NCBI RefSeq assembly: GCF_031769215.1
Contig: NW_026782000.1
Coordinates: 186,001-250,000, forward strand
Length of the DNA: 64,000 nucleotides
Source of the DNA: Ylistrum balloti
Lineage: Eukaryota
Direction of reading: 5' to 3'
Shown here: one piece after another, positions 25,542 through 55,390 of the stretch
How the letters are laid out: every line of letters starts with the position of its first letter
Numbering within the stretch: position 1 is the stretch's first letter
Notes under the pieces: generated by a model
Database searches by the model: none
Told to the model about the DNA's origin: nothing
What the model saw: only the letters and a program-made list of their open reading frames with translations
Program-made: the position numbers and the translations under genes

Positions 25542-25681
25542 ATGGCAACATTTGCCACAAGCATCCATGGACGCACTTTCAATTTCATTCATTGGCTAGA
25601 CACATTTCTACCATTTGACGAAATGAACGAGATTCCTTAGAGTCATATATCGAACCACAATTCACTGGGTTTTAGCAGACG
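25542..25681 (-). promoter_or_regulatory. LC8-A promoter module
   Basis: Plus-strand order: ATGGCAAC 25542, ATGGACGC 25567, ATTGG 25591, GTCATATATCGAACCACAA 25642, TAGCAGACG 25673. Lies just upstream of the exon 1 donor. Confidence 0.7.
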
Positions 25682-26149
25682 GCGCCGTATATTTCACGGG
25701 AAAACAGCCGTTCAACAAACGGCGGCTCATGTTCTTTCACGCGGATGAGGTAAAATTGATGAAAGCTTTAACAGGCCAGCTTATCGACAGCACATAGACT
25801 AGCATCGTTGCTATGACAATCTGACTTGAATAGTTAGAAATTTTCCATTGCGAAGCTTTTATCATCTGTTCACACATCCATCATTTGACGACTGCCTGCT
25901 GAAACACATTACGATCTTATTGGCATTAAGTGTGATCATCGATTACACCTGCACACATTCTTACGTGTGTGTTTTAAGACCTCTAGTGATTCAAAAAGAT
26001 CATCTAATATTTTCAATATATTATATATTGTACAAAGTCTTCGCTAATGTTAACTTATATTACGATTATATATTAATCACAACAACAGTCATCGCCTGTT
26101 AGGCTAGTGTCACAAGTGAGACTCCCAAAACTCCAATCTGAACGTTTAT

Positions 26150-26480
26150 TATTGACGCCGTGCTGTGGTGTTTGATGCCGTTGTATTATACATTGTTCCC
26201 ATTTGAGAACGTGACATTACTTACCTTGAATGACCAAAATTTACTTGGCGGGTGTCATCAATGAAACGGAAGACGCTTACTCTTCCAGAGCAACCGGTCT
26301 TATTCTCCTTGTACTTTTTCAGGAGCCCCCGTGTACATTTGTCTTTTGTCCAGATTATATTTTTTTGTTGACATGTCGGTACTTTCTTAATTTTTTCCCC
26401 CCAAAAAATATACTCACTAACCCCACCCCAACCCTTCCTGTTCCAACTCAATGTTTTGTTTTTAAGTTTCCGTTTGTGTT
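26150..26480 (+). mobile_element. 3' non-coding segment of a Penelope-like/retroposon family
   Basis: GAGAACGTGAC...GAATGACCAA...GCGGGTGTCATCAATGAAACGGAAGACGCTTAC...GGTCTTATTCTCC is shared with 57270-57390, which follows a PLE RT relic. Confidence 0.55.
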
Positions 26481-27186
26481 AGCCACATACACGCCTCCTT
26501 TAGTCTGGCTGCTTTTCGCGCATGAGCAAACGTTTAGACATAAACTTTAACAACATCATTTAGCTCACCCTCTTACCATTCACTTATGTGTCATTTGTAC
26601 AAAGGGTATTGTGTCATCAACAGGGACGCATTAATAACTAATACAGAAGTCCTCACGTAAGAAGGCTTTTATTTAGCACAGACATATACACTTGTACTCT
26701 GTTGACTTTCAGATGAATAGTATTACGCTGAAAGTCCGTTTTCTTGTACCTTGGAGTTACAGAGCAAGTTTTCTGTATTTCTATCCCCAATCCTAACTTG
26801 CACAGGGCCGGCGGAACGAGTGGGGGAGTGAGGGCTAGGGGGGGGGGGGGGGGGGGGGGGGGGGGGGGGGGGGGGCTTTAGCCTAGCCACTACCACCACC
26901 CCCAATAATTTTGTCAACATAAAAATAAAAATTTCAAATTGTGCACATGATATTTAATATTCAATGAATATAGTATATATATTCATTTCTTTGAATCATA
27001 TCGTTGAAATATTTCACTCTTCATAATATGAAAAGTTTAACTTGATCTTATCGAACAAAGAAACTATGCGAAATCAGTCATCTGATGTGAAGTTTCCAAA
27101 TACCCTCTCGCGGTTTTCATTGTTTACAAATTCATTTGCAACATCAACGGAATTAATAGATGCAGTCGCCTCTTTGTGGACATGAA

Positions 27187-52942: not shown

Positions 52943-53643
52943 AGTATATATATATTTTAATCCCCCGTATACAAATCTTGATGAAGGTCATATGATCAAT
53001 TAAAATATATTTCGATAGCGACCAAAATGCAGAATTGTCAAAGAATGTTTTGACATGTGTGAAAATAAACATTCGACACGGAAAACATTTAAGCACTACC
53101 AAACGTAATATATCTATTCAAATTAGAATAAAAATTGTCTTAAACGTGCAGATATTTAATCTGGATGTAACACAATGTCACACAAATTACGTAATAAGAT
53201 TCTATAGATTAATTCTAAAAGAACCTAATGCCCTATGACCTTTCTTATCTCAGTGTCATGCTACCATCTTTTTTGTCATTTAAAAAATACAGAACATTTT
53301 CTGTTTTACTTCATTTAAGTTGATTAATTTATTCAAATAAGTATTAAAACACAACGCAAAAAATAAATACATCAACTGCGACTCTCTTCCAAAATGTAAA
53401 TATTTTCTGCGGTAACAAGCATAGCTACATGTGGCGGGCGACATTTCATCACATGTATTTTGACCTATTTAAACAACATGGGACCATCACCATAATTCAC
53501 ATATATATATTTAACTGCATATTTAAGATATATAATAGATAATCAATCCACACATACCTGTATTTTTCTTGTTTTCCTAAAAATAAACCACCTCGCTTCG
53601 TCTCACAGATATTTGTGGATTATGTCTATGAGAGGTAAGGAGA

Positions 53644-53784
53644 GTTGGTAGCAACCGACATACACATGGACACAGTATACGACGTTTTCATTGGGCATAG
53701 TGTGTTTTTTTATTGGCAGCATTACTGGCACATAGCAGTGTCGTATATCGACCCATAATCCTTTACTTCATTCGTAGCAGACGA
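53644..53784 (-). promoter_or_regulatory. LC8-D promoter module
   Basis: GTTGGTAGCAAC 53644, ATGGACAC 53666, ATTGG 53690 and 53712, GTCGTATATCGACCCATAA 53740, TAGCAGACGA 53775. Confidence 0.72.
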
Positions 53785-55241
53785 TATTACCTGAGCGAGC
53801 AGTGTTACTTCGATCTAGCGTACCGTATTTTATAGGGAATGAATCACTTGTGCAATGTTACCTGTTATGTGAATATATTTTATTTCAACGTTATCTATGG
53901 CACAAGGAAACACATTTTTGTAATAAATAGCAAAGATATATTTTCAAATATGTTACACATCAATGGATGTTGTTTAAGGTCGATATTCTAATGCGTGAAT
54001 ATGCGCCTTGGCATTTAGAATCGTTACTTAAATTATTTTTATTACATAGTTATACACAAGTGCATTCATATGCCGTAACATCAACTTCATTAACATTAAT
54101 TATCATTAATTTCATTAACTTCATCTAAAATGTGTTTCGTAACATTTGAATCAGTACCAGTAGACGACTTATCTCGGAGTGTGACGTGCAATTGTTTTCT
54201 TTGCGATAACTTCTACGCACAGTGTCCAGAGTGCAAAACGTACCTAGATTTGTGTAAAAGAGTTTTGATATTTCAATCATCATCTTACATACAACAACTT
54301 GAGGTGTTTATTTTGTCCGCTATAAAGGGCCTTCGGCGTCTATCGGCCGAATAGATTATCGAGACACCTAAATTTACATAACCGCTCTTAGATTTTTAAC
54401 TTTGTATTTGTTTTATGTTCTATGTATGTAATGTAATTTACGTAATATTGATGTCTTGATGTTTTTGGGTTAGTGCACCTCCCTATATAATTTTTGACAT
54501 TTACGATTAATTTCGGTGTTCTTCAATTCTCTTATATATTTCTAAAAACTACAAAAATGAGTAAATAAATCAAATCATTTTTTTCCATCACGAGTTTTGT
54601 TATGAGCGATAATTATACGACCAATTAAAGTTTATCATCATTTCAGTTTTTATCCACAGTAAGCTTATATAAATCCAAAAATCCACAAATCAGTAGTCTT
54701 TGGTAATGCAATATTCAATATATTCAATAAAACTTACTTTTCTGAATATCTCGCAACCACCATTGGGAAATACGAATTCTTCTAAAACACATGGTTGACT
54801 TGTTTCTTATATCTTTTTACTTTGTTTTCCTGTTTGTCTTATAAGCTTCCTATTTCATGGTAAAGTAACTATCTTATTGATTAAAGTTTTGTTTAGATTT
54901 GTCTAATTTCATGAACTACAACTACAATTAGGCGGGAATGTATAAATGTCTGGATAAGTGTAAGTGTTGCATGTCAAAGTTCGTCTACCCACTCAAACCT
55001 TGGCTATAGTGGCATATGCTTCAAATAGATAAAATATTATTCACTTATTCTCTAAATCTCATTTACATTTTATTTGATTTATATATTTCATGAAACATCA
55101 AAATGCCATAAATACTTCATTGTTTTGACTGGTGTTAAAACGTGTTAAAAGCAGAGGAATGTCTCTGATATTTCGTCTGCTTACACATAACTGTATGAAT
55201 CCATCAGTCGTCAAGGGATGTTGGTTTCTATACATAGCTTG

Positions 55242-55390
55242 TCGTCTGCTAGAAGCTAGAGGATCATGGGATGATATACGAATCTACCAAGATGCCAACT
55301 CTTCACTAATGGATGGAAGATGACGAACCAATCAAATAATTCCCCTATGCGTCCATGAATGTAGTTTTGTAGGTTGCTGTTGCTACCAAC
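55242..55390 (+). promoter_or_regulatory. LC8-E promoter module (reverse complement, matching gene orientation)
   Basis: TCGTCTGCTA 55242, GATATACGA 55273, CCAAT 55328, GCGTCCAT about 55349, GTTGCTACCAAC 55379. Confidence 0.72.

What the first reader, a model, noticed from the sequence alone, without database searches (positions are those of the whole stretch)
25542..55390. Undescribed five-motif promoter module conserved across five LC8 paralogs
Seen: in the direction of transcription, copies A-E carry the same ordered motifs just upstream of non-coding exon 1: CGTCTGCTA, TGGKTCGATATAYGAC (degenerate in E), one or two CCAAT boxes, GYGTCCAT, GTTGCYAYC. The module is reverse-complemented in inverted copy E. 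The surrounding DNA of A and E shows no evident similarity to the others. Known: GTTGCYA is the RFX X-box half-site, CCAAT binds NF-Y, and RFX drives ciliary genes and cooperates with NF-Y on MHC-II promoters. TATCGA resembles the DRE core. I cannot assign CGTCTGCTA or GYGTCCAT. Inference: a conserved enhanceosome-like ciliary or spermatogenic module with two unknown sites.
Basis: partly seen in the sequence, partly recalled or inferred. Interest (0 to 1): 0.82.

Follow-up and report, generated by a model that had tools for sequence, protein, structure and literature searches.

The report
Conserved scallop LC8 gene promoter cassette
The ordered motif block is real: it is the inherited promoter of the scallop dynein light chain LC8 gene, kept with near-fixed spacing in all six local copies and in three other scallop genomes, but nothing here shows it is specific to cilia or sperm.

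Summary
**Observation confirmed and extended.**
- All five motifs sit in the stated order at the stated coordinates, upstream of five LC8 genes. They are islands in DNA that otherwise does not align.
- The window holds a sixth LC8 gene, F (62759-63025, minus strand). Its promoter lies about 130-256 bp past the window end and carries the same cassette in variant form.
- That variant is also kept at the orthologous DYNLL gene, beside an SRSF1-like gene, in Mizuhopecten yessoensis, Pecten maximus and GCA_041381155.1.
- So the block is the ancestral pectinid DYNLL promoter, the DYNLL-facing half of a bidirectional promoter, copied along with each tandem duplicate.

**Evidence for selection.**
- Paralog lineages differ by dS 0.7-2.0.
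- Box positions hold to within 1 bp in eight lineages. The main exception is a 10-bp insertion in B/C; in E the 3' box alone is displaced.

**Factor assignments.**
- Two same-strand CCAAT boxes, 22 or 32 bp apart, fit an NF-Y double-CCAAT platform.
- The RFX reading rests on a half-site only.
- The DRE reading fails: TCGATA is absent from E, F and the orthologs.
- CGTCTGCTA is a derived box found only in A-E.
- No RNA data for this animal were found, so the TSS is inferred from ATG-free leaders, splice donors and acceptors.

**Verdict.** An ordinary but neatly constrained promoter. The ciliary or spermatogenic reading is unsupported.

The parts
25541..25681 (-). Module of copy A. CGTCTGCTA 25673-25681; TGGTTCGATATATGAC 25642-25657; degenerate distal box CAAAT about 25613-25617; proximal CCAAT 25591-25595; GCGTCCAT 25567-25574; GTGGCAAAT 25550-25558 (the homologous +93 position); GTTGCCATC 25541-25549.
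25492..25540 (-). Inferred non-coding exon 1 of A. ATG-free leader ending at the donor AAG|GTAAAA, last exon base 25492. Exact start unknown. Intron about 1.38 kb to the acceptor at 24114.
   Evidence: inference; no RNA data
23843..24109 (-). LC8-A coding sequence, single exon, 89 aa.
   Evidence: PF01221
36750..36895 (-). Module of copy B. CGTCTGCTA 36887-36895; TGGGTCGATATACGAC 36852-36867; CCAAT 36823-36827 and 36791-36795 (32 bp apart, with a 10-bp insertion between them); GCGTCCAT 36767-36774; GTTGCTACC 36750-36758. Inferred exon 1 ends at 36678.
35588..35854 (-). LC8-B coding sequence.
48830..48975 (-). Module of copy C, a near-identical twin of B from a recent tandem duplication 12,080 bp away. 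Boxes at 48967-48975, 48932-48947, 48903-48907, 48871-48875, 48847-48854 and 48830-48838. Inferred exon 1 ends at 48758.
47673..47939 (-). LC8-C coding sequence.
53647..53783 (-). Module of copy D. CGTCTGCTA 53775-53783; TGGGTCGATATACGAC 53740-53755; CCAAT 53712-53716 and 53690-53694 (22 bp apart); GTGTCCAT 53666-53673; GTTGCTACC 53647-53655. Inferred exon 1 ends at 53558 (donor ACAG|GTATGT); a weaker alternative donor would end it at 53592.
52189..52455 (-). LC8-D coding sequence.
55243..55387 (+). Module of copy E, inverted and head-to-head with D. CGTCTGCTA 55243-55251; ATGGGATGATATACGA 55266-55281; degenerate distal box CTAAT 55306-55310; CCAAT 55328-55332; GCGTCCAT 55349-55356; tandem GTTGCT GTTGCTACC 55373-55387. 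Inferred exon 1 ends at 55458.
55974..56240 (+). LC8-E coding sequence.
62759..63025 (-). LC8-F coding sequence: the sixth copy, missed by the finding, and the ortholog of the gene next to SRSF1-like in other scallops. Its exon 1 and module lie outside the window, at the equivalent of about 64028-64256 (locus L008 6770-6998).

Best explanation
The block is the proximal, TATA-less promoter of the pectinid LC8/DYNLL gene.

Origin. It arose as the DYNLL-facing half of a compact bidirectional promoter, roughly 300 bp, shared with a divergently transcribed SRSF1-like gene. That is the situation at copy F and its orthologs. Each tandem LC8 duplicate in this scallop (A-E) carried it along.

Architecture, relative to the G of GATATA:
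- an upstream box: CGTCTGCTA in A-E, a TTCCG block in F and the orthologs;
- TGGG-NN-GATATAYG at 0;
- distal CCAAT at +33/34 (decayed in A and E);
- proximal CCAAT-S-R at +55/56;
- GYGTC at +76/77;
- GTKGCYA at +93/94;
- then an ATG-free leader of about 55-110 nt, a GT donor, a 0.5-1.4 kb intron, and an acceptor 5 nt before the ATG in all six copies here.

Mechanism (inferred). NF-Y binds the CCAAT box or boxes, which lie on one strand about two or three helical turns apart. It acts as the platform that fixes the start site some 45-60 bp downstream. Unidentified factors on the three flanking boxes contact that platform, and this is why box positions cannot drift.

Shown: the motifs, their order and spacing, their presence in paralogs and orthologs, and selection.
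Inferred: the TSS position, NF-Y occupancy and cooperative assembly.
For: - Motif statistics.
- The same cassette occurs at F and at orthologous loci of M. yessoensis, P. maximus and GCA_041381155.1, next to an RRM-containing gene on the opposite strand (species names).
- A profile HMM of the cassette hits only LC8 promoters (E 1e-28 to 1e-36) across the window and loci searched.
- Lineages are old: dS is 0.7-2.0 among A, B/C/D, E and F, comparable with F against its orthologs at 0.8-1.2. No similarity is detectable outside the coding sequence.
- Invariant columns are clustered, p<=0.001.
- GATATA to GYGTC is 81-82 bp in eight lineages and 92 bp in B/C. All boxes hold position to within 1 bp, except the 3' box of E.
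- Leaders from the GTTGC box to the donor hold 0 ATG in 299 independent nt. The module itself holds 26 ATG in 585 nt.
- Every copy has a polypyrimidine tract and AG acceptor just before the ATG.
- Contigs from three other DNA runs span the D and E modules, and no listed variant falls inside either. Variants lie just outside, at 53796, 55441 and 55458.
- Double, precisely spaced CCAAT boxes at least 19 bp apart are a known NF-Y platform in human promoters (PMC4889920).
Against: - There is no transcript, CAGE or binding data for this species. RNA runs held only foreign coding-sequence fragments, so the TSS and exon 1 are inferred.
- The 22-bp CCAAT spacing is off the human peaks of 24-28 and 35-37 bp.
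- The distal box is lost in A and E, so a double platform is not obligatory.
- Three of the five boxes have no assigned factor.
- The cassette was not found within 8-10 kb upstream of LC8 genes in two gastropods. It may therefore be restricted to pectinids, or simply not alignable.
Confidence: 0.75

Rival explanations
1. The block is an RFX plus NF-Y enhanceosome dedicated to ciliary or spermatogenic expression of the extra LC8 paralogs, with GTTGCYA as the X-box.
For: - A perfect RFX-type half-site (GTTGCY, the complement of RGYAAC) sits at the same position in nine of ten sequences.
- Copy E has a one-mismatch full match, created by a tandem half-site.
- LC8 is an axonemal component, and the ATMIN-DYNLL1 axis affects ciliogenesis in mouse (PMC4197704).
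- RFX5 co-localises with double CCAAT platforms in human cells.
Against: - No palindromic X-box. The second half is degenerate everywhere, and matches with <=2 mismatches are expected 0.9 times per 275 bp by chance.
- At the homologous position A reads GTGGCAAAT.
- The site lies downstream of the CCAAT boxes at the inferred start site, unlike the MHC-II X-Y order.
- The cassette also serves the ancestral F gene, paired with SRSF1-like, in species where no LC8 array was seen nearby.
- No paper in the library links DYNLL to an X-box.
Confidence: 0.12
2. One or more of the unassigned boxes (TGGG-NN-GATATAYG, GYGTC, CGTCTGCTA) is the site of the zinc-finger factor ASCIZ/ATMIN. This is the dedicated, LC8-sensing activator of DYNLL1 in mammals and of ctp in Drosophila. 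Every paralog would then stay inside one LC8 feedback loop.
For: - ASCIZ is the only transcription factor reported as dedicated to the LC8 gene.
- The axis is conserved between Drosophila and human, and activity needs its zinc fingers (PMC5963919; PMC4197704).
- Conserved boxes with no obvious match to common factors are what such a site would look like.
Against: - The ASCIZ DNA motif is not given in any text I could read, so no comparison was possible.
- No ASCIZ ortholog was examined in this genome (one search found no note of one).
Confidence: 0.15
3. The similarity is not due to selection on a promoter. It would be residual identity from recent duplication, or patchy gene conversion.
For: - B and C are a very recent duplicate, 98% identical over 2 kb.
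- Coding sequences of B, C and D have been homogenised: dS is 0.04-0.13 while their promoters and introns are more diverged.
Against: - Lineages A, B/C/D, E and F have dS 0.7-2.0 and no alignable non-coding DNA.
- Conserved columns form 3-9 bp islands in unalignable spacer. Conversion tracts would not produce that pattern.
- The same islands are conserved between species.
Confidence: 0.03
4. The block is transcribed, as part of a longer 5' UTR or a structured RNA with the start site upstream of CGTCTGCTA, rather than being promoter DNA.
For: - There are no TSS data.
- Conservation in F orthologs continues about 45 nt past the GTTGCTA box.
Against: - The block is rich in ATG triplets, 2-9 per copy, while the segment after the GTTGC box has none in A-E.
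- Nothing upstream of the first box is conserved.
- No Rfam family matches anywhere in the window.
- In F the block abuts the start of the oppositely oriented SRSF1-like gene.
Confidence: 0.05

Closest known systems
Double-CCAAT NF-Y platform of TATA-less and bidirectional promoters (human data: PMC4889920)
   Same: - Two same-strand CCAAT boxes at a fixed distance of at least 19 bp, close upstream of the start site.
- Flanked by other factor sites at fixed offsets.
- The ancestral copy sits in a head-to-head gene pair.
   Different: - Spacing is 22 bp (32 bp in B/C), not the human peaks of 24-28 and 35-37 bp.
- The partner boxes are not Sp1 or E-box sites and remain unassigned.
- Two paralogs retain only one intact CCAAT.
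MHC class II S-X-X2-Y enhanceosome (RFX + CREB + NF-Y + CIITA)
   Same: - Ordered boxes with strictly conserved spacing.
- Includes a CCAAT (Y) box and an RFX-type sequence.
- Conserved across paralogous genes.
   Different: - The RFX-like element is only a half-site.
- It lies about 37 bp downstream of the CCAAT box instead of upstream.
- No S or X2 equivalents were identified.
ASCIZ/ATMIN-driven DYNLL1 (mammals) and ctp (Drosophila) promoters
   Same: The same gene family is the target, and a dedicated regulator would explain conserved gene-specific boxes.
   Different: No ASCIZ motif was available for comparison. The cassette could not be traced outside pectinids. Dependence on ASCIZ is untested.
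Drosophila DRE (TATCGATA, DREF)
   Same: Copies A-D contain TCGATA inside the second box.
   Different: The TCGA core is absent from E, F and all orthologs. The conserved core is GATATAYG preceded by TGGG.

Membership tests
NF-Y CCAAT-box promoter | Invariant CCAAT pentamer with the 3' flank S-R (consensus RRCCAATSR, recalled from memory) | tested here: met
   The proximal box is CCAAT plus C/G plus A/G in all 10 sequences. The distal box is intact in B, C, D, F and the orthologs, and is CAAAT in A and CTAAT in E.
NF-Y CCAAT-box promoter | Position roughly 50-100 bp upstream of the transcription start | tested here: inconclusive
   The proximal box lies 37-51 bp upstream of the GTTGC box. An ATG-free leader begins after that box. 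No TSS data are available.
NF-Y CCAAT-box promoter | NF-Y trimer binds the site | not testable with these tools
   Needs EMSA, DAP-seq or ChIP.
Double-CCAAT NF-Y platform | Two CCAAT boxes on one strand, at least 19 bp apart, at a fixed distance | tested here: met
   The spacing is 22 bp in D, F and all four ortholog sequences, and 32 bp in B/C. No reverse-strand ATTGG occurs. The distance rule is from PMC4889920. A and E keep only one intact box.
RFX X-box | Imperfect palindrome GTNRCC N0-3 RGYAAC (consensus recalled from memory) | tested here: not met
   Only the half-site is conserved. The best full matches have 2 mismatches (1 in E, through a tandem half-site). The chance rate for <=2 mismatches is 0.9 per 275 bp in this window.
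DRE / DREF site | TATCGATA core conserved | tested here: not met
   TCGATA occurs only in A-D. E reads GATGATATA, and F and the orthologs read GACGATATA or GATGATATA.
MHC-II type X-Y enhanceosome | X box upstream of the Y (CCAAT) box at a fixed distance, with S and X2 boxes | tested here: not met
   The RFX-like half-site is downstream of both CCAAT boxes. No S or X2 boxes were looked for beyond that.
Bidirectional promoter (copy F only) | Two divergently oriented genes with starts under 1 kb apart | tested here: met
   The first coding exon of the SRSF1-like gene (two RRM_1 domains) ends about 170 bp from the second box, on the opposite strand. This holds in this genome and in three other scallop genomes.
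LC8 / DYNLL gene family (the downstream genes) | 89-aa Dynein_light domain protein | tested here: met
   Six intact 89-codon reading frames. PF01221 is on record for them.

The most novel reading that the evidence does not exclude
The cassette is a rigid, gene-family-specific enhanceosome. Its unassigned boxes (TGGG-NN-GATATAYG, GYGTC and the A-E-specific CGTCTGCTA) would be sites for an LC8-dedicated factor such as ASCIZ/ATMIN, docking on an NF-Y platform. All six paralogs would then remain under one dosage-sensing feedback loop. If so, it would give the first defined cis-element for LC8 autoregulation outside mammals and flies.
Probability: 0.15. Interest if true: 0.6.

Novelty: new member of a known kind. 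Interest (0 to 1): 0.35.

Why it matters
LC8 is among the most conserved hub proteins in eukaryotes, and its dosage is tightly controlled.

This locus works as a natural mutagenesis experiment. Six paralogs and four ortholog sequences have randomised everything except five short boxes and their spacing. That defines a minimal promoter of about 130 bp and three candidate binding sites for unknown factors, ready for reporter and binding assays.

It also shows that tandem LC8 duplicates kept the ancestral regulatory logic after losing the partner gene of a bidirectional promoter.

Beyond that, it is an ordinary case of promoter conservation. It does not by itself reveal a new regulatory principle.

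Tried and rejected
1. **RNA evidence for the TSS.** Two run searches found no RNA run of this species. Laying reads gave only foreign coding-sequence pieces from a marine metatranscriptome.
2. **Transcript contigs by exact protein look-up.** None was found for A-F.
3. **Deeper conservation.**
   - The cassette profile found nothing upstream of LC8 genes in Pomacea canaliculata, Gigantopelta aegis or a metagenome scaffold.
   - The Pomacea paralogs share no obvious upstream islands.
   - An architecture pattern scan of the metagenome contigs gave 0 hits.
   - Cluster listing gave no other bivalve sequences to use.
4. **ASCIZ/ATMIN motif.** It is not stated in any readable text, and the JBC 2012 and Genetics 2014 papers are not held.
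5. **Relics of the SRSF1-like side upstream of A-E.** None was found.
6. **Known RNA families.** No Rfam match in the window.
7. **Resemblances recalled from memory and not tested.** These are leads only.
   - TTCTGGGA in F and the orthologs resembles a ZNF143 core.
   - TTCCG resembles an ETS core.
   - TGCTAATGTCAGCA in F resembles a Maf recognition element.
8. **Pol III B-box reading of GGTTCGA in copy A.** Rejected, because the other copies do not share it.
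Full report
**What is in the sequence.**
- The window is GCA_031769215.1, contig JAUZWB010000626.1, positions 186001-250000.
- It holds six intact 89-codon LC8/DYNLL reading frames, not five. They are:
  - A 23843-24109 (-)
  - B 35588-35854 (-)
  - C 47673-47939 (-)
  - D 52189-52455 (-)
  - E 55974-56240 (+)
  - F 62759-63025 (-) (Pfam Dynein_light on record)
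- In all six copies the whole coding sequence is one exon. A polypyrimidine tract and an AG acceptor precede it, 5 nt before the ATG.

**Check of the observation.**
- CGTCTGCTA occurs five times and only at the five promoters, against 0.1 expected.
- The 16-mer TGGKTCGATATAYGAC occurs in A-D. E carries ATGGGATGATATACGA.
- GYGTCCAT and GTTGCYAYC are present at all five promoters. The additional GTTGCYATC hits at 56214 and 62777 are coding sequence.
- Order and strand are as described.
- B and C are 98% identical over 2 kb, a recent tandem duplication.
- D shares with B/C only part of the intron and a 79-bp stretch of the module.
- A, E and F share nothing detectable by blastn with the others outside the coding sequence.
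- In a MAFFT alignment, 33 of 154 module columns are invariant across five independent paralog lineages, against 3 of 183 flank columns. The invariant columns are clustered, with column permutation p<=0.001.

**Extension: a sixth copy and orthologs.**
- The promoter of copy F lies just beyond the window end. It was read in locus L008 at 6770-6998, equivalent to window positions about 64028-64256.
- There the same cassette appears in variant form:
  - a TTCCG block;
  - CTGGGACGATATATGC;
  - GCCAATTAA;
  - 22 bp further, TCCAATCA;
  - GCGTCATT;
  - GTTGCTAAT.
- On the opposite strand, about 170 bp from the second box, begins a gene with two RRM_1 domains that is SRSF1-like.
- The protein of F is encoded identically at the orthologous locus in three other genomes: Mizuhopecten yessoensis (GCA_002113885.2), Pecten maximus (GCA_902652985.1) and GCA_041381155.1, which has two recent copies.
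- At all of these loci the same cassette is conserved (species names). An oppositely oriented gene lies beside it at three of the four loci: it has RRM_1 hits in M. yessoensis, no Pfam hit on record in P. maximus and L007, and none was called in L006.
- A profile HMM of the cassette scores 93-120 bits at every LC8 promoter and nothing above noise elsewhere in the 64-kb window or the fetched loci.
- CGTCTGCTA is absent from F and from the orthologs. It is a derived box of the A-E clade.

**Age and selection.**
- Synonymous divergence among lineages A, B/C/D, E and F is 0.7-2.0. That is as large as between F and its orthologs in other scallop genera, at 0.8-1.2.
- B, C and D have homogenised coding sequences (dS 0.04-0.13) with more diverged non-coding DNA.
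- Neutral DNA is therefore saturated between lineages, yet the boxes are intact.

**Spacing.** Measured from the G of GATATA:

| Box | Most lineages | B/C |
|---|---|---|
| distal CCAAT | +33/34 | +34 |
| proximal CCAAT | +55/56 | +66 |
| GYGTC | +76/77 | +87 |
| GTKGC | +93/94 | +103 |

- The B/C values reflect one 10-bp insertion between the CCAAT boxes, which is about one helical turn.
- In E the 3' box is duplicated and sits at +100 and +106.
- By contrast, leader lengths (about 55-110 nt) and intron lengths (0.5-1.4 kb) vary freely.
- Contigs from three other DNA runs span the D and E modules. No listed variant falls inside either, while variants lie just outside at 53796, 55441 and 55458. 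With about 1.8 variants expected inside, this is consistent with constraint but not significant.

**Where transcription starts.**
- No RNA run of this species could be found. A marine metatranscriptome matched only the coding sequence at 85-90% identity, so it comes from other organisms.
- The evidence is therefore indirect:
  - the segment between the GTTGC box and the first good GT donor contains no ATG in A-E (0 in 299 independent nt), whereas the cassette holds 26 in 585 nt;
  - in F and G41a/b the only ATG in that segment overlaps the GTTGCTAATG box (no donor was found for M. yessoensis or P. maximus);
  - plausible donors and conserved acceptors exist in every copy;
  - the cassette is the only conserved non-coding block upstream of the genes.
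- I infer a start at or just after the GTKGCYA box. That puts the CCAAT boxes near -50 and -70.

**Which factors.**
- *NF-Y.* The proximal box fits the NF-Y consensus in all ten sequences. In human cells nearly half of NF-Y-bound regions carry two CCAAT boxes at preferred distances and never closer than 19 bp, and this platform recruits other factors (PMC4889920). NF-Y is thus a well-founded though untested assignment.
- *RFX.* Only a half-site is conserved. Full X-box matches at <=2 mismatches are expected by chance 0.9 times per 275 bp. The box order differs from the MHC-II X-Y module. I found no paper linking DYNLL genes to an X-box.
- *DRE.* Rejected. TCGATA is confined to A-D, while the conserved core is TGGG-NN-GATATAYG.
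- *ASCIZ/ATMIN.* This is the only factor reported as dedicated to LC8 transcription. It works in mammals and Drosophila, needs its zinc fingers and senses LC8 levels (PMC5963919; PMC4197704). Its DNA motif was not available in readable text. The idea that an unassigned box is its site remains open.
- *Leads from memory only.* These are an ETS-like TTCCG, a ZNF143-like TTCTGGGA and a Maf-element-like TGCTAATGTCAGCA in F and the orthologs. All three are typical companions in bidirectional housekeeping promoters.

**Interpretation.**
- The cassette is the ancestral pectinid DYNLL promoter, originally one half of a DYNLL/SRSF1-like bidirectional promoter.
- Each tandem duplicate inherited it, and purifying selection has held it with fixed geometry.
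- It removes the basis for a paralog-specific ciliary or spermatogenic function, because the same cassette serves the F-type gene that lies beside SRSF1-like in other scallops.
- It could not be traced to gastropods or found in metagenome contigs, so its depth beyond Pectinidae is unknown.

**Verdict.**
- This is a real, well-delimited and undescribed instance of a known kind of element.
- It is useful as a ready-made footprint for experiments and is of modest general surprise.
- No sequence taken for human was met or used, and no masked stretch (N) occurs in the window.

Noticed in passing
window 62759-63025 (-) and L008:6500-7000: A sixth LC8 gene (F) lies head-to-head with an SRSF1-like two-RRM gene just past the window end. 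The same pairing holds in M. yessoensis, P. maximus and GCA_041381155.1.
   Followed up: yes
window 54165-54466: A very high-copy repeat lies between the D and E promoters. Summed contig word-depth rises from about 16 to several thousand, with many rearranged joints in three DNA runs. It is probably a short interspersed or MITE-like element.
   Followed up: no
L008:6894-6935 and the orthologous positions in L004-L007: The ATG inside GTTGCTAATG of F opens a short upstream reading frame of 12-15 codons in three species. It is frame-shifted by a 14-nt insertion in GCA_041381155.1, so it is probably not a conserved peptide. Alternatively the start site lies downstream of it.
   Followed up: partly
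window 55458: The inferred last base of E exon 1 is G here but C in contigs of three other DNA runs. This is a polymorphism at the -1 position of the donor.
   Followed up: no
window 47673-47939 vs 52189-52455 vs 35588-35854: The coding sequence of C is closer to D (dS 0.04) than to its duplication twin B (dS 0.08), although the B and C flanks are 98% identical. This is consistent with gene conversion limited to the coding exon.
   Followed up: partly
L014 (Pomacea canaliculata CM009765.1) and L006/L007 (GCA_041381155.1): LC8 tandem arrays arose independently elsewhere: three copies within 15 kb in Pomacea, and two near-identical F-type copies about 24 kb apart in GCA_041381155.1, each with the cassette.
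   Followed up: partly
window 17840-21291 (+), from L001 gene calls: A UbiE/COQ5-type methyltransferase gene lies beyond the 3' end of LC8-A, on the opposite strand.
   Followed up: no
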